Part shown: positions 1 to 13,583 of the stretch, piece by piece
How the letters are laid out: each line of letters starts with the position of its first letter
Position numbering within the stretch: position 1 is the first letter of the stretch
IMG/VR virus record: IMGVR_UViG_3300033892_000026
Location: 1 to 13,583 of that record
DNA length: 13,583 nucleotides
Strand: one strand, 5' to 3'
Notes under the pieces: model-generated
The model's database searches: none
Seen by the model: the letters and a program-made list of their open reading frames with translations, nothing else
What the model was told of the DNA's origin: nothing
Made by a program: the position numbers and the translations under genes

Positions 1-16
1 AAGAGGAGTGAAAGAA

Positions 17-745
17 ATGGACAGGGATGAGCTTAAACAAATTATTCAAAACCTTCCAGATAACTCACCTAAACTTTTAGAGTATTTGAAAGAGGCAAGG
101 GAGAAGGGATGGGCTGACGTTGTTGACATGATTGCAATAAAGCTGGGGCTGAAGGAAGAGAAGAAAAAAGGAAAGAGAGAGGAGAGCGAGTTACTTAGGA
201 AGATTCTGAAACCCTTGGGCAAAAAGAAGATAGAACACACGTGGGATTACTCGGTGGATTTCACCGAAGCCAGGAAAGTACTTACATCTGCCTACAAACA
301 GCTGTATGATATGAATCTCATGCCCTACGAGGCGTACGTCGCTATCCTCCTCATACAACTAACAAACGGATCTAGAATCAAAGAAGCGATAAGGGCGTTT
401 AAGACGTTCGTAGAGTCAGGGCAAAGAGAGTTCCAGTTACAGGCTGAGAAGCACGGTAACACAAGGTTTTTCATCATCCATGACGTCATCAGGAACAGGC
501 TAGCGTATAAATCGATACTGACAATCTCGGACGACAAACTAGAAGCGAGGATAAGGATGTTCGCACTGAAGTACCTGAAATGTAACACACATTCGTTACG
601 TTACGCACTGATCTCCTTCCTTGCAAAAAATGCCACAGACCCTGCAATCATCGCGAAGATAACAGGTCACAAAAAATTGAACAGGATAATACAGTACACA
701 CAGACAAAGGACGCCATCGATATTTTGCGTAAGCTTTCTTCCTAG
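17..745 (+). CDS. int: Tyrosine recombinase / integrase (small, about 242 aa)
   Basis: The catalytic set is visible in order: R (NGSRIKEA), K (AEKHG), HxxR (THSLRY), H (ITGHK), Y (IQYT). GAGGAG at 3-8 favours ATG at 17 over GTG at 8. Size is similar to the ~240-aa integrases of ATV-like viruses (recalled). Confidence 0.92.
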   Translation: MDRDELKQIIQNLPDNSPKLLEYLKEAREKGWADVVDMIAIKLGLKEEKKKGKREESELLRKILKPLGKKKIEHTWDYSVDFTEARKVLTSAYKQLYDMNLMPYEAYVAILLIQLTNGSRIKEAIRAFKTFVESGQREFQLQAEKHGNTRFFIIHDVIRNRLAYKSILTISDDKLEARIRMFALKYLKCNTHSLRYALISFLAKNATDPAIIAKITGHKKLNRIIQYTQTKDAIDILRKLSS

Positions 746-6213: not shown

Positions 6214-6870
6214 ATGGCATATACTAAAAAACAAAACGAAGTCCCTACTCCTGAACAGTTCCAATTCATTGTCTATAAAGAGGTGTGTATGGGGGACAAA
6301 AGCCTTGTACATCCTACCATAGCCATAGAGAGGTTAAACACTATAATGCTTACCTATTACAGCGACGAGATAGAGGAACTGTGGAGGGAATTAGTTCTCA
6401 AAAGATATGAGAACGCCACGTCTGAGGACGAACTAAGGCAGATTCTGCAAATTGGCTGTGACCTCATGTTTATCGTAATGAACGCGTCTGGCGAAGATGT
6501 CAAGTCGTTAGTAACGAAAATACTGAACAACACAAGGAAAAAACATCTGTTTTATGTCAACGAGGAAGGACTAGTTGCTGAAAGTTCGTATCTCATAGAC
6601 GTGCTGACAAGGTTTGTGAACCCCAACGGGTTCGATGTGTTGACTGTTTTAAGCATACTAAAGGACGTGCAAATTAGGACGGCTACTATGATTAGCAGTA
6701 TTAAGGGGACGTCACTGTATCAGTCGCTTATAAGTGAACTAGGCATTGATGAAAATACTATTGAGAAAAAATGCACGGCGAAGTACTATAGGGAATGCGT
6801 AACTGAGAAGAAAACGCAGTTGCTGAAAGCGTTACAGTTTATCAGGATGAACATAAATATTCCGCGTTAG
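6214..6870 (+). CDS. Hypothetical 218-aa all-alpha protein (weak MazG-like pattern)
   Basis: RBS GAGGTGG at 6201-6207; helical composition. Confidence 0.8.
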   Translation: MAYTKKQNEVPTPEQFQFIVYKEVCMGDKSLVHPTIAIERLNTIMLTYYSDEIEELWRELVLKRYENATSEDELRQILQIGCDLMFIVMNASGEDVKSLVTKILNNTRKKHLFYVNEEGLVAESSYLIDVLTRFVNPNGFDVLTVLSILKDVQIRTATMISSIKGTSLYQSLISELGIDENTIEKKCTAKYYRECVTEKKTQLLKALQFIRMNINIPR

Positions 6871-6909
6871 AACTAACCTAAAAAAGAATTTATAAAAAAT
6901 GGGGGTTAA

Positions 6910-6952
6910 GGGGACGGAAAGCCTCGCCCTTCCAAGGCGGGGAGGAGGTCAG
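6910..6952 (+). mobile_element. 43-bp IS200/IS605-family remnant (single hairpin; probable left-end/right-end fusion scar)
   Basis: GC-rich island in AT-rich DNA: GGGGACGGAAAG-CCTCGCC-CTTCCAA-GGCGGGG-AGGAGGTCAG. It follows TTAA (6906-6909) and ends in TCAG, resembling the subterminal hairpins of Sulfolobales IS605-type elements (recalled). Clean removal restores a TAA stop and adjacent terminator for the neighbouring gene. Confidence 0.75.
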
Positions 6953-7236
6953 TATGTATTTACATTTACATTTAGTTTTTTGAGCAGTTCATCCATGAGG
7001 CGTTTATCCTTTTTTAAAATGTCTGCGATATCATCAATATAGTCCTCGACAATCTCTTCTAGGATATCGTCAATGTGTTCTCTGACAATCTCTTCTAAAT
7101 CGTTACGGTCGAACTCGACATCATCAACATCAACATCAACATAACCTTTGTAGTCGTCGCATATGATTCCTTCGTATGTATCATTATAACAAATGTCCTC
7201 TAAGTCTTTGTATCTTATAAACACCGGGACTTTCAC
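6949..7236 (-). CDS. Highly acidic 95-aa protein (29 D/E) with an internal 12-aa duplication
   Basis: GTG start with a GGGGCG RBS-like element; minus-strand TATA TTTATATA (7282-7275); T-run terminator on the minus strand at 6899-6894. Confidence 0.85.
   Translation of the reverse strand: MKVPVFIRYKDLEDICYNDTYEGIICDDYKGYVDVDVDDVEFDRNDLEEIVREHIDDILEEIVEDYIDDIADILKKDKRLMDELLKKLNVNVNTY
7027..7098. repeat. Imperfect 36-bp tandem duplication (LEEIVREHIDDI / LEEIVEDYIDDI)
   Basis: GATATCATCAATATAGTCCTCGACAATCTCTTCTAG versus GATATCGTCAATGTGTTCTCTGACAATCTCTTCTAA. Confidence 0.85.
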
Positions 7237-9036: not shown

Positions 9037-9696
9037 CTACAGCCTGTCTGTACTTATTGGAGTAATACCCAACGTTTGTGCTATTTCTAGTGGTGACAAC
9101 ATCTCTACTCTCATTTTCGACGTAGTTACTCCTCCGACTTCCATTATACTCCTTTCGAACGCTAACAACAGTAAGACTACTAGCTTGTGTGCCTGGTTAA
9201 GCTTAGCCATTATTTCATCGTAGTTCGCGTCGCTCGCTATCAAACTCTGAAGCTCCGAAAACTTTTCGGTCAATTCATCGGTTGCAAGGCTTGTAAATCT
9301 GTCGGTTAAAATCGATAATAAGATTTGGAAGGTCTCATCTACGTTATATGGGGTACCGTAAAACTGTAGAGATCCACTCTTGAGGTCTTTTGTTAGAATT
9401 AGGACGTAATTGTTTAGGATTTCCTGGATAGTCGTTATTTGGACTGCTTCCTTCTGTGTTACTTGCCTAGTCGGTATGATAGCTTTTTCCCTAATTGCTT
9501 GTCTGACTAAGTTTGGGTCTACTTTTACAATGTTCCTCTTCCCTAATGGCGATAACTGAGGTTGCTGTTGGGTTTGTTGTAATTGTGTGAATAGTGGCGT
9601 TGGTGGTGGAGGGGACGCAGTGCCTCCTACTTCATAGACGGGTTCCTGTTGCTGTTGTTGTTGCTGTTTTTTATTATTTGGATTATTTAGACTCAT
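9037..9696 (-). CDS. Hypothetical 219-aa protein with a poly-Q/poly-P N-terminus and helical C-terminal domain
   Basis: Minus-strand TATA (TTTAAAAA, 9726-9719) about 22 nt upstream; first gene of a 3-gene operon. Confidence 0.85.
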   Translation of the reverse strand: MSLNNPNNKKQQQQQQQEPVYEVGGTASPPPPTPLFTQLQQTQQQPQLSPLGKRNIVKVDPNLVRQAIREKAIIPTRQVTQKEAVQITTIQEILNNYVLILTKDLKSGSLQFYGTPYNVDETFQILLSILTDRFTSLATDELTEKFSELQSLIASDANYDEIMAKLNQAHKLVVLLLLAFERSIMEVGGVTTSKMRVEMLSPLEIAQTLGITPISTDRL

Positions 9697-9718
9697 GTTA
9701 TTTTCTTGTCCCAGAAGG

Positions 9719-9769
9719 TTTTTAAAGCGATTCCAAGACTCAAACAGATGTTTGAGGAAAATTTATAAG
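9719..9769. promoter_or_regulatory. Divergent promoter with perfect palindrome CTCAAACA-GA-TGTTTGAG (9739-9756)
   Basis: Minus-strand TATA at 9719-9726; plus-strand BRE GAAAA at 9757-9761 and TATA TTTATAAG at 9762-9769; perfect 8-bp arms between them. Confidence 0.85.
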
Positions 9770-9790
9770 TTTCTGACGCCAGATGTTCTT

Positions 9791-11542
9791 ATGCAATTGC
9801 AAGAACAACAAGGACAAAACACCGAAAATCTGTCTCCTTCTACCGACGTCTCCACTATTGCACAACGCTTGAAAGACGAGTTAGATAAATACGTTGTCGG
9901 AAATGAAGACGTCAAAACAGCTGTTATAACAGGGCTATTGACTGGGTTTCCTACTTTGCTCATCGGAGACCCAGGTACTGCGAAAACGTATACTATTGAG
10001 ATTTTATCGAAGATGATTGACGGCATTAAACCAGAAGAGCTTTTCATAGTGTTAGCTCATGAGGCAATGACACCAGAGGACATTTTTGGAAATGTAAACC
10101 TGAAAAAACTGAGAGAAGAAGGAGTACTGGAATATATTACCGAAGGCTTCCTACCTTCTGCTAAGTTAGTTTTCATAGACGAGATATTCAAGAGCAACAA
10201 AGTCCTTGCCGAATCGCTGTTCAGAGCGATCAACGAAAAGAAGTTCAAGAACGGGAGTAAAGAGGTCTCTTTACCTTGGTTGGCGTTCTTTTCCGCGTCA
10301 AACGAAGTGAGGGTAAACACACAAGCGGACAGAGCATTTCTAGACAGGTTCAAGATATTCGCTACAGTTCTTTCGCCTAACCTTGAAGATATACAAGACC
10401 TCAAGTCGATCGCAGAAAGGTATTATAAAGTCCTCACAGCGACTAAGCCTACTTCCATCCCGATTGTAACGAGTTACGACGAAGTCAAAAAAATACAGGA
10501 CAAAATCCTTTCAGATTACACTAAATATGTGACAGAGGATATTACACTCGAAGCGATAAAGCAGGCTAACCTTATCTTGGGTGAGATAGGACGTGCTTTG
10601 CAAAACCCGAGGACGTTTGGAGATTCCGGAATTGTAAGGATGTACTTCAAATCCATGGGTGGATATCTGACGATCAGCGAGAGAAAGTTCAAAAGCATAA
10701 TGCAAGTGGCTAACGCACTACGTGAAATGTTCGGCAACTCAACAATTACACCAGTGCATACCGCGTTAGCGTTCTACCTTACAATCCCGTTCACTCCAGA
10801 GTTAAAGAACATAATTACTCCTATAATCTCGACAATGATCAAAACATATTTCGGTGCTGAAGAAGGATCGAACAGGACTTCTATTGATATTAAGGGCTTG
10901 TTAGACAACTTTTTTGAAATTACAAATGATATTTTTGTAGACAAAAATCTGAATAAGATAATAGACGAAACGACCGCTTATGCTGTAAATGTTATTACTA
11001 ACTCATTCCCTGGATCGTCATCCGATTTAGCAAAAGACAAAGCAGACCTTATTTCGAAATTTTCCGATGTAACAACTAGTAAAGACACAGTGGATAAATT
11101 GAATAAATTCATAAAAGCTGTAGGTGCCTTAAGCGATATTGAAACTAAGTACGCTAATAATATTAGAGTAAGGACTTTAGCACGTAAACTCCTTCAAAGT
11201 ATTATGTCTAGTGTCTCTACCAAGATAGATGTAAATCGTTTAAAGACCGATGCATTAGATCAGCTTCAGAAGGCTTATGCCAGGATAAAAGCAGAAATTG
11301 AAAGCAAATTTAACGAACTAACGAAACAAGGAGGTAATGATGAGAACAAAAAACTTATCGAAGGGATACGAAAATTCTTCCCGCAATTTTCTAACGTATT
11401 ACCACAAGAAGCAGTGTTACAAGACCAAAAACAGCAGATAATGGTGAACCTTGCCATTGCTTTTAATGAGGCGGAGAAAAAAATAGTAGATTTCATGGAC
11501 ACATTAGAAAAGACTATAAAGATGCTTTCCCAGATGAAGTGA
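9791..11542 (+). CDS. MoxR/RavA-type AAA+ ATPase (ATV p618-like), about 583 aa
   Basis: Walker A GDPGTAKT, Walker B VFIDEIFK, sensor I ASNE, arginine finger AFLDRF, and ISERK; long helical C-terminus. Start moved to ATG 9791 on promoter geometry. Confidence 0.93.
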   Translation: MQLQEQQGQNTENLSPSTDVSTIAQRLKDELDKYVVGNEDVKTAVITGLLTGFPTLLIGDPGTAKTYTIEILSKMIDGIKPEELFIVLAHEAMTPEDIFGNVNLKKLREEGVLEYITEGFLPSAKLVFIDEIFKSNKVLAESLFRAINEKKFKNGSKEVSLPWLAFFSASNEVRVNTQADRAFLDRFKIFATVLSPNLEDIQDLKSIAERYYKVLTATKPTSIPIVTSYDEVKKIQDKILSDYTKYVTEDITLEAIKQANLILGEIGRALQNPRTFGDSGIVRMYFKSMGGYLTISERKFKSIMQVANALREMFGNSTITPVHTALAFYLTIPFTPELKNIITPIISTMIKTYFGAEEGSNRTSIDIKGLLDNFFEITNDIFVDKNLNKIIDETTAYAVNVITNSFPGSSSDLAKDKADLISKFSDVTTSKDTVDKLNKFIKAVGALSDIETKYANNIRVRTLARKLLQSIMSSVSTKIDVNRLKTDALDQLQKAYARIKAEIESKFNELTKQGGNDENKKLIEGIRKFFPQFSNVLPQEAVLQDQKQQIMVNLAIAFNEAEKKIVDFMDTLEKTIKMLSQMK

Positions 11543-11546
11543 GAGT

Positions 11547-13583
11547 ATGCAAAACTTCTTTAATAATAATGAAGACGACGAGGAGAAACAACTAATACAA
11601 CTAACAGACACTGTCTTTAAAACAGTATCCAAATTACTTAGGATTGGAGCTGACATTAGTGACAGTGTATGGAATACTGTACATAAACTTGTTAAGATAG
11701 CATCAGAACAAAATAAACTTCTATTACAATTCCCAGCAATCCTCGCTTATTTCGTTTATAATTTTCTAAAAAACATCGACCTAGATAGAATTGACGACAT
11801 AAACGAAAAACTGGACGATATCCAACGTCTGATAAAGCGTAAGAACCTTCAGGGTTTATCATTCAACACCATCAAACAGATGTTACAACAGGAGTTGCAG
11901 GAGAGAAAATTCAGACGTAACAGACCTAACAAAACAGAAAAACAACAAGAAGGACAGAAGCAAGGCGAAAAAGAAGGAGAAAAACAGGAAGAGGGAGAAG
12001 AAGGGCAAGAAAGTGGAGAAGAAGGACAAAACATGAATCAAGAGGGTGAAGGAGAAGGACAGGAATCAGAAGGTGAAGGAGAGGGAGAAGAAGAATTAGG
12101 AGAAGAAGGAGAGGGAGGGGAAAGTGAAAATGAAGGGAGCCAGGAACAACAGAGACAGGAATTAGAAAAAGAAAGTCAGGAGAGTAACGGGCAAGAAAAC
12201 GGTGAGGAACAAGAAGGTGAAGAAAGCAATGAAGGGGAACAACAAGGTGGAGAAGGAGAATCACAGGAAGGTGTAGAAGAAGGAGAAGCTGAGGGGAGCC
12301 AGAGCGGAGAAGAGGGAGAGGAGGCAGAATCACAGGGTGAAGAAGGACAAAGCGAGGAAGAAGGAAACGAAGGAGAACAAGGTAATGCCCAGGAAGGACA
12401 AGAATTAGGAGAGGAAGAAGGGGAACAAAGCGAAAACGAAGGACAAAATGGCGAGGAGCAGGGAGGTCAGAACAGTGGAGAAGGACAAGAGGGTAATGAG
12501 GAAGAAAGTGAAGGAAGCCCGAGCGGGGAACAGGAATCAGAAGGAGAATCGCAAGAAGGCGAACAAGGAGGTGGTGAAGAGGGTGAAGGTGGAGAGGAAG
12601 GTGGAGAGCAGGAAGGTGGTGAAGGAGAAGGAAGCGAAAGTGAAAGTACCCAAGGTCAAAATGGTGAACAAGGTGGAGAGGGTTCAGAAGGTGGAGAAGG
12701 GCAAGAAGTTGAAGATATTTTCGAAGACCTCGAAGACAACATTAACGAGGAATCAATGATCTTAGATCAGTTGGAAGAAAGCCTGCAAAAATCACTGACA
12801 GCATTATCAGTTGGGAAAGGCTCGGGAGGAGGAATACTAAACGAAGTCAATCCTAGAATTTTAGAACTGTTAGAGAATGCTAACAGGATTCTGGCTCTGG
12901 CTAACCAGGTCGATTTAGAGTACGCTAACAGAGGCGTTAAGGATCAAGGAGGTGTAATGAAGGGGATAACGACTGGAAATAATATTAAACACATGTTTAA
13001 GAGTCAACTGCTCCTACCAGATGAGATTTTCCTAGAACGCTACACGAACAGAGCTTTACTACAAAGGGCAGTGGAAAACGAGGGAGTCGGAGACTTCTAT
13101 TTCCTTATAGACAAAAGCGGATCGATGAGAAGTACAATGCCGAACGGGTATACGGCATTTGAAAACGTTTCTGCCGTAGCCTTAGCTTCTGCTATGGAAG
13201 CTGAAAAGAATAATAAGAAGGTATTTGTACAGTACTTCGATACTTCATCAACTGAGCCTTTGGACGTTAACAACGTTTTCGAGATAGCTCAGACCGAACC
13301 TGGAGGAGGAACTGACATGATGGACGCACTAAAACACTTCATGGATTATTATAATAACTATCCAGGGTTAAAGGACGTTAGACAGATCTTCATAATGTCT
13401 GACTTTGAGACGAATTATGATAGATTTACTCTTGAGGAGTTTAAGAACTTTGCAAGAAATAATAACCTAGTAGTGACATGTCTGCATGTATATGGTGATG
13501 ATAAAGTGCCTGATGAAATGCAATACATAATAGACGAAATCTGTGACGAATATTACAAATTTAATAACTATGACGCCAGCGAA
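11547..13583 (+). CDS. VWA (MIDAS) domain protein with a long acidic linker, MoxR partner (ATV p892-like); truncated by the window end
   Basis: ATG 4 nt after the ATPase stop (MQNFFNNNEDDEEKQ...); 679 codons to the window end. The same frame gives YFLIDKSGSM (DxSxS at 13110-13124), PGGGTD and IFIMSDF. Absent from the ORF track, consistent with having no stop in the window. Confidence 0.92.
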   Translation, partial: MQNFFNNNEDDEEKQLIQLTDTVFKTVSKLLRIGADISDSVWNTVHKLVKIASEQNKLLLQFPAILAYFVYNFLKNIDLDRIDDINEKLDDIQRLIKRKNLQGLSFNTIKQMLQQELQERKFRRNRPNKTEKQQEGQKQGEKEGEKQEEGEEGQESGEEGQNMNQEGEGEGQESEGEGEGEEELGEEGEGGESENEGSQEQQRQELEKESQESNGQENGEEQEGEESNEGEQQGGEGESQEGVEEGEAEGSQSGEEGEEAESQGEEGQSEEEGNEGEQGNAQEGQELGEEEGEQSENEGQNGEEQGGQNSGEGQEGNEEESEGSPSGEQESEGESQEGEQGGGEEGEGGEEGGEQEGGEGEGSESESTQGQNGEQGGEGSEGGEGQEVEDIFEDLEDNINEESMILDQLEESLQKSLTALSVGKGSGGGILNEVNPRILELLENANRILALANQVDLEYANRGVKDQGGVMKGITTGNNIKHMFKSQLLLPDEIFLERYTNRALLQRAVENEGVGDFYFLIDKSGSMRSTMPNGYTAFENVSAVALASAMEAEKNNKKVFVQYFDTSSTEPLDVNNVFEIAQTEPGGGTDMMDALKHFMDYYNNYPGLKDVRQIFIMSDFETNYDRFTLEEFKNFARNNNLVVTCLHVYGDDKVPDEMQYIIDEICDEYYKFNNYDASE
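11935..12750 (+). repeat. Low-complexity purine-rich tract encoding an E/G/Q/S-rich linker of about 270 aa
   Basis: Reiterated GAA/GGA/GAG/CAA codons (EGEGEG, QESEGE, EELGEEEG motifs). Confidence 0.9.

What the first reader, a model, noticed from the sequence alone, without database searches (positions are those of the whole stretch)
6906..6960. 43-bp IS605-like hairpin scar that silently replaces a stop codon
Removing 6910-6952 changes the minus strand from AAT ACA TAC TGA to AAT ACA TAT TAA CCCCCATTTTTT. The protein still ends N-T-Y-stop and is now directly followed by an AACCC..Tn terminator like those of the cassettes. This fixes the insertion boundaries: after TTAA, ending at TCAG. IS200/IS605 elements insert 3' of a short AT-rich motif without target duplication and have similar hairpins at both ends. 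One hairpin with a left-end-like 5' flank and a right-end-like 3' flank suggests the tnpA/tnpB body was deleted by recombination between the two hairpins. Such a scar would also separate the TAM from the target sequence and so could protect the site from TnpB re-cutting (inference).
Basis: partly seen in the sequence, partly recalled or inferred. Interest (0 to 1): 0.65.

Follow-up and report, generated by a model that had tools for sequence, protein, structure and literature searches.

The report
Solo-hairpin IS605 remnant on stop codon
The hairpin is the fused left and right tips (59 bp, not 43 bp) of a TnpB-type IS200/IS605 insertion sequence that landed on the stop codon of a small gene in a Sulfolobales spindle-shaped virus; such "terminal-only" remnants are already known from salt-loving archaea, so this is a cleanly resolved but ordinary case.

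Summary
The stretch is a single-hairpin remnant of an IS200/IS605 (IS1341-group, solo-tnpB) element: a left-end 5' part fused to a right-end 3' part.

- **Match to a real IS.** The 5' half matches the left end, and the 3' half the right end, of the same tnpB-carrying IS in Acidianus two-tailed virus.
- **Match to a known RNA family.** The hairpin plus AGGAGGTCAG is the 3' terminus of Rfam family HgcC, the archaeal omega-RNA "RE-like tetraloop".
- **Right boundary confirmed.** The element ends at TCAG (6952).
- **Left boundary wrong.** The element starts at 6894, right after TTTAT (6889-6893), not after TTAA (6909). TTTAT is the published TAM of Sulfolobus solo-tnpB elements. The "AACCCCCATTTTTT terminator" is therefore part of the element.
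- **Not strictly silent.** The insertion split a TAA, added one Tyr, and supplied TGA from the element's own tip.
- **Evidence of insertion.** Relatives show two empty sites and at least four independent insertions of such elements in this roughly 60-bp gap between convergent genes.

Equivalent 52-bp "terminal-only PATEs", made by deletion between the two hairpins, were described in Haloquadratum in 2011. Verdict: new member of a known kind, low to moderate interest. The TnpB-escape idea is logical but untested.

The parts
6889..6893 (+). TTTAT: target / transposon-adjacent motif immediately 5' of the element's left end
   Evidence: 14 of 16 tabulated independent left-end copies are preceded by TTAC or TTAT, with unrelated sequence further out. 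TTAY occurs at only 1.3% of positions in the window. TTTAT is the TAM reported for solo-tnpB elements of S. islandicus (PMC10640517).
6894..6917 (+). Left-end (LE) linker, including the conserved G5-TTAA-G4 block.
   Evidence: 89% identity to the LEs in STSV4 and UViG_3300033892_000017, and 94% to the LE of the ATV gp43 IS.
6918..6921 (+). AAAG, four bases 5' of the hairpin foot. It sits in the position of the IS608 left guide tetranucleotide (GL = AAAG).
   Evidence: Read from the sequence. IS608 GL AAAG / GR GAAT come from PMC3597680. AAAG copies almost never have tnpB upstream (1 of 27), against 20 of 30 for GAAC copies.
6922..6942 (+). Subterminal hairpin: arms 6922-6928 and 6936-6942, loop 6929-6935. 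It is the shared LE/RE palindrome, also known as the 'RE-like tetraloop' stem.
   Evidence: Fold. Aligned with high posterior probability to the terminal stem of Rfam HgcC. Covarying closing pair.
6943..6952 (+). Right-end (RE) linker AGGAGG plus terminal TCAG; 10 nt from hairpin foot to element end
   Evidence: 91% identity to the RE of the ATV gp43 IS. Identical to the HgcC consensus AGGAGGUCAG. Similarity stops after CAG in 104 of 125 copies.
6953..6972 (+). RE-flanking DNA. This would have been the omega-RNA guide/target of a full-length element at this site (inference).
   Evidence: Position relative to the RE. Non-conserved 3' sequences are described as guides in PMC10640517. Not tested here.
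6949..7236 (-). 95-aa gene of unknown function. Its stop TGA (complement of 6949-6951) and last codon TAC straddle the element's right tip.
   Evidence: ORF list. Homologues in SMV2/3/4 and four IMG/VR contigs end in TAA followed by ATTCTTTTTT. No Pfam match.
6880..6889 (-). Native ATTCTTTTTT tract (minus strand) that directly follows the stop codon in all relatives. It is the likely original oligo-T terminator.
   Evidence: alignment of nine orthologous loci.
6214..6870 (+). Convergent 218-aa gene ('conserved archaeal viral protein' in SMV1)

Best explanation
Window 6894-6952 is a 59-bp 'terminal-only' derivative of an IS200/IS605-family insertion sequence of the IS1341 group (solo tnpB).

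It sits 3' of TTTAT, on the plus strand, and so antisense to the 95-aa gene. It keeps four parts:
- the left-end linker;
- one copy of the subterminal hairpin that full-length elements carry as a direct repeat at both ends;
- the 10-nt right-end linker;
- the terminal TCAG.

The tnpB gene and nearly all of the omega-RNA scaffold are gone. The most likely cause is deletion between the two hairpin repeats (inferred). This could have happened at this site, or in a parent copy before a short element arrived here.

The insertion split the gene's TAA (ACA TA|A TAA). The frame now reads TAC TGA, using the complement of the element's TCAG tip. Transcription then meets a T6 run made by the complement of the left-end A6, 16 nt before the native T-run.

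The remnant is probably inert today. It encodes nothing and retains only the last stem of the guide-RNA scaffold. Its single hairpin carries the left-type AAAG tetranucleotide, which under the IS608 rule does not match the right cleavage site TCAG.
For: 1. **Halves match one real IS.** In ATV, the gp43 transposase (Cas12f1-like_TNB 6.6e-19, with a sub-threshold OrfB_IS605 match) is flanked by a left end matching window 6895-6926 at 94% and a right end matching 6919-6953 at 91%. ATV ORF457 (OrfB_IS605 3e-30) and ORF409 (annotated transposase; not scanned) show the same ends.
2. **Right-end motif is widespread and known.** HgcC was already equated with IS1341-type RE/omega-RNAs in PMC4615843.
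3. **Left-versus-right signature.** GAAC before the hairpin goes with tnpB upstream in 20 of 30 copies, AAAG in 1 of 27 (p = 4e-7). GAAC pairs with TCAG in 41 of 42 copies, and GAAT with TCAA in 3 of 5 (p = 1e-3). This is the IS608-type guide/cleavage-site logic.
4. **Left boundary.** TTAC or TTAT precedes the conserved start in 14 of the 16 tabulated copies. Homology with the 98.7%-identical contig L247 ends at 6895. The published TAM is TTTAT.
5. **Insertion polymorphism.** Two empty sites (L172, SMV2). Other mini or full copies sit at three other points and in both orientations in the same intergenic gap.
6. **Full versus mini at one site.** L171 has a left end with interior sequence, while L169 and SMV1 have terminal-only copies, all at the same TTCGAACTTAC junction.
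7. **Size series.** About 1.3-kb IS (ATV), a 337-bp tnpB-less copy (L182) and roughly 60-bp copies (five or more in one Sulfolobales genome).
8. **Precedent.** 52-bp terminal-only PATEs made by repeat-mediated core deletion in Haloquadratum (PMC3119063).
Against: - No full-length element and no exact empty allele was found at this very site in a close relative. Empty sites come from relatives only 64-74% identical in the protein, so in-situ deletion versus arrival as a short element is unresolved.
- Left ends of several full elements have degenerate or missing hairpins (ATV gp43 and ORF457 ISs).
- The stem is almost invariant in sequence, so covariation support rests mainly on one closing pair.
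- TAT occurs on both sides of the element. This makes the deduced ancestral gene end ambiguous by three bases.
- No Y1 transposase was found in the window, in ATV or in the two host MAGs searched.
Confidence: 0.85

Rival explanations
1. The short element is itself mobile. In this reading a 59-bp single-hairpin PATE was transposed into this TTTAT site by a Y1 TnpA supplied in trans, rather than arising here by deletion of a full IS.
For: - At least five similar ~60-bp copies lie at different sites in one Sulfolobales genome.
- Several copies occur in other viral contigs.
- At least four separate insertions occupy this one intergenic gap.
- Six strain-specific insertions of the 52-bp ISHwa23 version in Haloquadratum were taken as a hint of mobility (PMC3119063).
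- SMV1 encodes a Y1 TnpA.
Against: - There is only one hairpin and one guide-like tetranucleotide (AAAG). Under the IS608 rule this matches TTAC/TTAT but not TCAG.
- Copies differ by 10-20%, with no sign of a recent burst.
- At one orthologous junction a longer copy and terminal-only copies coexist, as in-situ deletion predicts.
Confidence: 0.3
2. One reading: a 43-bp scar inserted after TTAA (6906-6909), with AACCCCCATTTTTT as the gene's native terminator and a fully silent stop-codon replacement.
For: - The arithmetic works.
- TTTAA is the TAM of Sulfolobus elements that carry both tnpA and tnpB.
Against: - 6894-6909 is conserved as part of the left end in 16 or more copies with unrelated outer flanks.
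- No relative has that tract after the gene.
- Homology with L247 runs through TTAA and stops at 6895.
- BLAST matches of host copies start at window 6887-6890.
- No second copy of the tract is in the window.
Confidence: 0.04
3. A native, lineage-conserved terminator or regulatory hairpin of the convergent gene pair, unrelated to mobile DNA.
For: - It sits between convergent genes and is followed on the minus strand by T-runs.
- A related hairpin is also present in SMV3 and SMV4.
Against: - Position and orientation differ between relatives, and two relatives lack it.
- The same motif flanks tnpB genes.
- Fold energy is not better than shuffles.
Confidence: 0.03
4. A tRNA-derived attachment site or other small RNA gene.
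For: The loop CTTCCAA with a 5-7 bp stem superficially resembles an anticodon arm. There is also a weak Rfam HgcC hit.
Against: - ARAGORN finds no tRNA.
- Only the last hairpin of HgcC aligns; the rest of the model is unmatched.
- HgcC itself is the IS1341-type RE RNA.
Confidence: 0.01

Closest known systems
Terminal-only PATEs of Haloquadratum walsbyi (HqIRS46 core-deleted form; 52-bp form of ISHwa23) - Dyall-Smith et al. 2011, PMC3119063
   Same: - Derived from IS605-type (IS1341-type tnpB) elements.
- No inverted repeats and no target duplication.
- One near-terminal palindrome left after deletion between the two direct-repeat palindromes.
- About 50-60 bp long.
- The 5' linker is longer than the 3' linker.
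- A 4-5 nt target sequence lies at the 5' end.
   Different: - Found in a crenarchaeal (Sulfolobales) virus genome rather than a haloarchaeal chromosome.
- 59 bp rather than 52 bp, with a different left-end linker (G5-TTAA-G4 block).
- Here it overlaps and replaces a stop codon.
RE-like tetraloop / Rfam HgcC (RF00062) and the PATE-derived RNA VNG_R0052 of Halobacterium salinarum - Gomes-Filho et al. 2015, PMC4615843
   Same: The same G+C stem followed by AGGAGGUCAG. Fused LE-RE elements were reported as common in haloarchaea.
   Different: - Only the last stem of the HgcC model is present in the window (20.6 bits against a gathering score of 50).
- The loop is 7 nt rather than UUCA.
- Expression is not known.
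IS608 of Helicobacter pylori (mechanistic reference for IS200/IS605). GL AAAG and GR GAAT are from PMC3597680; TTAC / TCAA cleavage sites are from my own knowledge of Barabas et al. 2008.
   Same: - AAAG before the left hairpin, with TTAC/TTAT as the target.
- 10-nt right linker.
- The right tetranucleotide covaries with the last base of the cleavage site (GAAC-TCAG, GAAT-TCAA).
   Different: - Left linker of 28 nt rather than 19 nt.
- The window copy has a single hairpin.
- The family here mostly lacks tnpA in cis.
Solo-tnpB IS200/IS605 elements of Sulfolobus islandicus (SisTnpB study, PMC10640517) and the SMN1/SMN2 non-inverted-repeat elements of Sulfolobus (PMC3839810)
   Same: - TAM TTTAT at the left end.
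- Conserved RE hairpins as part of the omega-RNA, followed by a non-conserved guide.
- Non-autonomous derivatives occur in Sulfolobus viruses and plasmids.
   Different: - Those elements are 250-1500 bp and keep an omega-RNA or small ORFs.
- The annotated SMN2 in SMV1 does not share these ends on inspection.

Membership tests
IS200/IS605 family (as a non-autonomous derivative) | No terminal inverted repeats and no target-site duplication | tested here: met
   The ends (A6-T-G5... and ...GGTCAG) are not inverted repeats. Flanks of eight or more copies show no consistent duplication. The TAT on both sides in the window is not seen elsewhere.
IS200/IS605 family (as a non-autonomous derivative) | Subterminal imperfect palindromes of similar sequence at both ends of full-length members | tested here: met
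   The ATV ORF409 IS has the CCTCGCC / GGCGGGG-type stem at both LE and RE. The same holds for LEs in STSV4, L005 and L225. Some ATV LEs are degenerate.
IS200/IS605 family (as a non-autonomous derivative) | Insertion 3' of a short AT-rich target that abuts the left end | tested here: met
   TTAC/TTAT precedes 14 of the 16 tabulated left ends. The window has TTTAT. The published TAM is TTTAT.
IS200/IS605 family (as a non-autonomous derivative) | Guide tetranucleotide 5' of each hairpin matched to its cleavage site | tested here: met
   For the family: AAAG with TTAC; GAAC with TCAG in 41 of 42; GAAT with TCAA in 3 of 5. For the window copy, only the left-type AAAG is present.
IS200/IS605 family (as a non-autonomous derivative) | Association of the ends with tnpB (OrfB_IS605 / zinc-ribbon TNB domain) | tested here: met
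   Pfam hits on the ATV transposases. tblastn finds tnpB-like sequence upstream of 20 of 30 GAAC-type right ends. None is in the window itself.
IS200/IS605 family (as a non-autonomous derivative) | Mobilisation by a Y1 (HUH) TnpA acting on single-stranded DNA | not testable with these tools
   Y1_Tnp was found in SMV1 (1.9e-44). It was not found in the window, in ATV or in two incomplete host genomes. Binding and cleavage need biochemistry.
Terminal-only PATE (palindrome-associated transposable element) | Too short to encode a transposase, with a single near-terminal palindrome flanked by LE-type 5' and RE-type 3' sequence | tested here: met
   59 bp in total. 6894-6921 matches LEs and 6922-6952 matches REs.
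Terminal-only PATE (palindrome-associated transposable element) | [quoted passage not shown] | tested here: inconclusive
   A longer copy and terminal-only copies share one orthologous junction (L171 versus L169 and SMV1). No full-length copy was seen at the window's own site.
HgcC / omega-RNA gene (functional guide RNA) | Full scaffold reaching the Rfam gathering score | tested here: not met
   20.6 bits against 50. Only the terminal stem and tail align.

The most novel reading that the evidence does not exclude
Terminal-only solo-hairpin remnants may be the characteristic 'escape products' of RNA-guided homing. Precise excision recreates TAM plus target and is cut by TnpB-omega-RNA. IS loss would then survive mainly as hairpin-to-hairpin deletions that keep TAM and target apart. 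That would explain why about a quarter of the copies sampled (34 of 125, across several archaeal phyla) and several viral copies are short AAAG-type fusions. Alternatively, these single-hairpin units may be mobile in their own right.
Probability: 0.2. Interest if true: 0.55.

Novelty: new member of a known kind. Interest (0 to 1): 0.3.

Why it matters
- **Annotation.** It corrects how this virus group should be read. The G+C hairpins and the CCCCC-T6 tracts between genes in bicaudaviruses are IS200/IS605 end remnants, not native terminators. They mark a hot spot of repeated insertion at gene ends, where TAA stops and T-runs create TTTAY targets.
- **Gene ends.** It shows that a transposon tip can donate a stop codon and an oligo-T tract to a viral gene.
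- **Search key.** The motif (AAAG or GAAC, then the hairpin, then AGGAGGTCAG) finds TnpB/omega-RNA right ends and their fused remnants across Archaea.
- **Novelty.** The phenomenon itself was described in haloarchaea in 2011-2015. The gain is extension to Sulfolobales viruses, not a new mechanism.

Tried and rejected
- **Single-sequence folding** gave no signal above shuffles.
- **ARAGORN** found no tRNA, so the attP idea was dropped.
- **Consensus terminator scan** did not flag the site.
- **Searches within the window** for further copies of the TTAA-containing tract or of CGGAAAGCC found none beyond chance.
- **A looser left-end pattern scan of viral contigs** returned mostly chance matches and added only one usable copy.
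- **A first regular expression for right ends** was too strict and found nothing. It was corrected.
- **An apparent right end 1.7 kb downstream of the L005 left end** turned out to be an unrelated half-hairpin fragment.
- **Stem covariation beyond the closing pair** could not be shown, because the arms are nearly invariant.
No read-level test for empty or full alleles was made and read laying was not used. I did not try to get this by another route.
- **The metagenome scan** gave one near-identical contig but no empty allele of the exact site.

Full report
**What the window is**

The 13.6-kb window is a fragment of a bicaudavirus-like genome from IMG/VR, estimated about 25% complete.
- It is about 80% identical in DNA to Sulfolobus monocaudaviruses SMV1, SMV3 and SMV4 around the finding.
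- It carries the MoxR-type AAA ATPase and VWA genes, and an integrase C-terminal fragment.
- The finding lies between two convergent genes. One is a 218-aa plus-strand gene (6214-6870). The other is a 95-aa minus-strand gene (6949-7236). Neither has a Pfam match.

**Checking the observation**

The 43-mer at 6910-6952 reads as stated and occurs once in the window.

The hairpin is a 7-bp stem with arms at 6922-6928 and 6936-6942. Its energy is no better than that of shuffled sequence: z = -0.39 as RNA and +0.44 as DNA. On this sequence alone the hairpin would not count as significant.

**The motif is a multi-copy family tied to tnpB**

A short BLAST of 6885-6960 found several copies each in ATV, ATV2, SMV1, SMV3, HAV2 and an STSV4 fragment. 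The copies fall into two kinds.
- **Kind one.** It shares the window's 5' part: an A-run, G5-TTAA-G4, then CGGAAAG and the hairpin. It continues into ATGGATA-CCCCC and a TATA-like box.
- **Kind two.** It shares the window's 3' part: the hairpin, then AGGAGGTCAG.

In ATV these two kinds bracket annotated transposase genes.
- gp43 (20979-22130) has kind one upstream and kind two downstream.
- ORF457 and ORF409 behave the same way.
- Pfam identifies gp43 and ORF457 as TnpB: OrfB_IS605 (3e-30 in ORF457, sub-threshold in gp43) plus the Cas12f1-like TNB zinc ribbon in both. ORF409 was not scanned.

So kind one is the left end (LE) and kind two the right end (RE) of IS1341-group IS200/IS605 elements. 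The window copy is an LE 5' part and an RE 3' part joined through one hairpin. Against the gp43 IS, window 6895-6926 matches the LE at 94% and 6919-6953 matches the RE at 91%.

**The right-end motif is ancient and already has a name**

Hits came from Sulfolobales, Desulfurococcales, Thermoproteales, Thermococci, Archaeoglobi, Halobacteria, Nitrososphaeria and others. Some hits overlap the 3' end of 380-445-aa open frames.

The Rfam family HgcC has as its consensus 3' end GGaaC, an 8-bp stem with a UUUA loop, then AGGAGGUCAG. The ATV ORF457 RE and a 337-bp tnpB-less copy in a Sulfolobaceae genome align along the whole model. The window aligns confidently only over the last stem and tail, at 20.6 bits against a gathering score of 50.

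Gomes-Filho et al. 2015 had already linked this 'RE-like tetraloop' to IS1341-type tnpB 3' ends, to HgcC, and to fused LE-RE elements (PMC4615843).

**Statistics on 125 distinct genomic copies**

- The base pair that closes the loop is Watson-Crick in 105 of 125 copies: C-G 85, T-A 8, G-C 6, A-T 6 (p about 1e-43 against 25%). This is the structural evidence that the single fold lacked.
- After GGTC comes AG in 104 of 125 copies, and the following bases are random. This fixes the right boundary at TCAG.
- The four bases before the stem are GAAC in 42 copies and AAAG in 34. GAAC copies have tnpB-like sequence upstream in 20 of 30 assessable cases. AAAG copies have it in 1 of 27 (p = 4e-7).
- GAAC goes with TCAG in 41 of 42 copies. 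The haloarchaeal GAAT goes with TCAA in 3 of 5 (p = 1e-3).
- IS608 has GL = AAAG and GR = GAAT (PMC3597680). From my own knowledge, its cleavage sites are TTAC and TCAA. The family therefore follows the IS608 logic, with a covarying last pair at the right end. The window copy carries the left-type tetranucleotide.

**The left boundary**

Sixteen left-end-type copies were aligned on the internal TTAA. They share the A-rich start and the G-run. In 14 of them, TTAC or TTAT comes immediately before this start, and beyond that the flanks are unrelated. TTAY occurs at only 1.3% of positions in the window.

Four further observations agree.
- In five Sulfolobales genomes the BLAST matches of the full-length short copies begin at window 6887-6890 and end at 6952-6954, and their sequences show the same boundaries.
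- A metagenome contig 98.7% identical over the gene end and the element loses homology at 6895. It continues with TTAC and unrelated DNA.
- Xu et al. 2023 report TTTAT as the LE-adjacent TAM of solo-tnpB elements in S. islandicus, and TTTAA for elements with both tnpA and tnpB (PMC10640517).
- The window has TTTAT at 6889-6893.

The element is therefore 6894-6952, 59 bp.

**Orthologous loci**

Nine homologous gene ends were compared.
- L172 and SMV2 have no element.
- SMV4 and SMV3 have a 33-nt hairpin version after ATTCTTTTTTGGA.
- L170 has a full short copy at a third point.
- L169 and SMV1 have short copies, and L171 has a left end with interior sequence. All three sit at one TTCGAACTTAC junction in the opposite orientation.

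In every relative the stop TAA is followed directly by ATTCTTTTTT. The window shows this only after removing the 59 bp, giving ACA TAA TAA ATTC. After removing the 43 bp, an extra 16-nt tract would remain that no relative has.

So the insertion split a TAA, added one Tyr codon, and supplied TGA from the complement of TCAG. Because TAT lies on both sides of the element, the deduced ancestral end is uncertain by three bases. In either reading the present stop comes from the element.

**Origin of the short form**

Full elements carry the same stem at both ends as a direct repeat. A size series exists: about 1.3 kb, 337 bp and about 60 bp.

Dyall-Smith et al. 2011 documented, by strain comparison in Haloquadratum, repeat-mediated core deletions that turn a 1500-bp tnpB element into a 52-bp terminal-only PATE. 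They left open whether such units can also move (PMC3119063).

Here the L171 versus L169/SMV1 comparison favours in-situ deletion at that junction. For the window's own site I found neither a full-length allele nor a close empty allele. I rate in-situ deletion as somewhat more likely than arrival as a short unit, and I list the latter as a rival.

SMV1 encodes a Y1 TnpA. The window, ATV and the two host MAGs searched did not show one.

**The TnpB-escape idea**

Under the donor-joint model, precise excision rejoins TAM and target, which TnpB-omega-RNA then cuts (PMC10055086). A remnant that keeps 59 bp between TTTAT and 6953 onward cannot be such a target. This is sound logic, but it remains inference.

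**Verdict**

- The object is a new member of a known kind: a terminal-only PATE of an IS1341-type element, here in a Sulfolobales virus, sitting on a stop codon.
- Interest is low to moderate.

Noticed in passing
Loci, e.g. L071 6588-6615, L081 913-940 (minus), L134 6603-6630: An even shorter fused form is common in Desulfurococcales and other archaeal lineages. It is about 39 nt: TTAC, then AACTGAAAG, the same hairpin, and AGGAGGTCAG. It has no tnpB upstream. It appears to be a widespread class of terminal-only IS605 remnants.
   Followed up: partly
125 copies loci: The tetranucleotide before the right-end hairpin covaries with the last base of the element. GAAC goes with TCAG in 41 of 42 copies, and haloarchaeal GAAT goes with TCAA in 3 of 5. 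This fits the IS608 guide/cleavage-site pairing rule.
   Followed up: yes
L247 (LAFJ01000433.1), bases 1-229 versus window 7123-6895: A 98.7%-identical contig shares the gene end and the element. Beyond the left end it continues into DNA that, in UViG_3300033892_000017, flanks another left-end-like copy. This suggests recombination, or assembly joining, at these repeats.
   Followed up: partly
SMV1 HG322870.1 33827-34177 (L002 2503-2845): In SMV1 the 95-aa gene is absent. The same gap holds an annotated SMN2 element plus an inverted, right-end-degenerate short copy. The intergenic gap is a hot spot for mobile DNA.
   Followed up: partly
ATV NC_007409 49576-49632 and about 50810-50860 (L246 1677-1733, 2911-2960): Two short fused copies each lie right after the stop of the neighbouring genes gp63 and gp64, behind similar gene-end sequence, TTTTTAC and a T-run. 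They were possibly duplicated together with the gene ends; whether gp63 and gp64 are paralogues was not tested.
   Followed up: no
L182 (G003 contig 3, 800-1440, minus): A 337-bp tnpB-less element in a Sulfolobaceae genome. It has a complete left end with promoter-like box, an HgcC-like omega-RNA region (28 bits) and a right end, after TTTAT. It is an omega-RNA-only intermediate in the size series.
   Followed up: partly
SMV1 HG322870.1 27129-27161 (+), 48366-48399 (-), 26609-26959 (-): Two copies of another short class (GTGATAAATGAACGACAA, then the hairpin and GGTCAG). One lies next to a Y1 TnpA gene (Pfam Y1_Tnp, 1.9e-44). The two hairpin ends around that transposase point outward, which I did not resolve.
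   Followed up: no
window 2-745 (+), 9695-11542 (+), 11547-13583 (+): Context genes: an integrase C-terminal fragment running off the window start (Phage_integrase, 1.5e-5, below cut-off), a MoxR-type AAA ATPase (1.8e-31), and a protein with a weak VWA domain. A similar gene set is known from ATV-like viruses (from memory, not checked here).
   Followed up: no
L249 (Ga0208314_103954), locus 701-796: A homologue of the 95-aa gene that is 88% identical over the first 32 residues and then diverges into unrelated AT-rich sequence. It is possibly another disruption of this gene.
   Followed up: no
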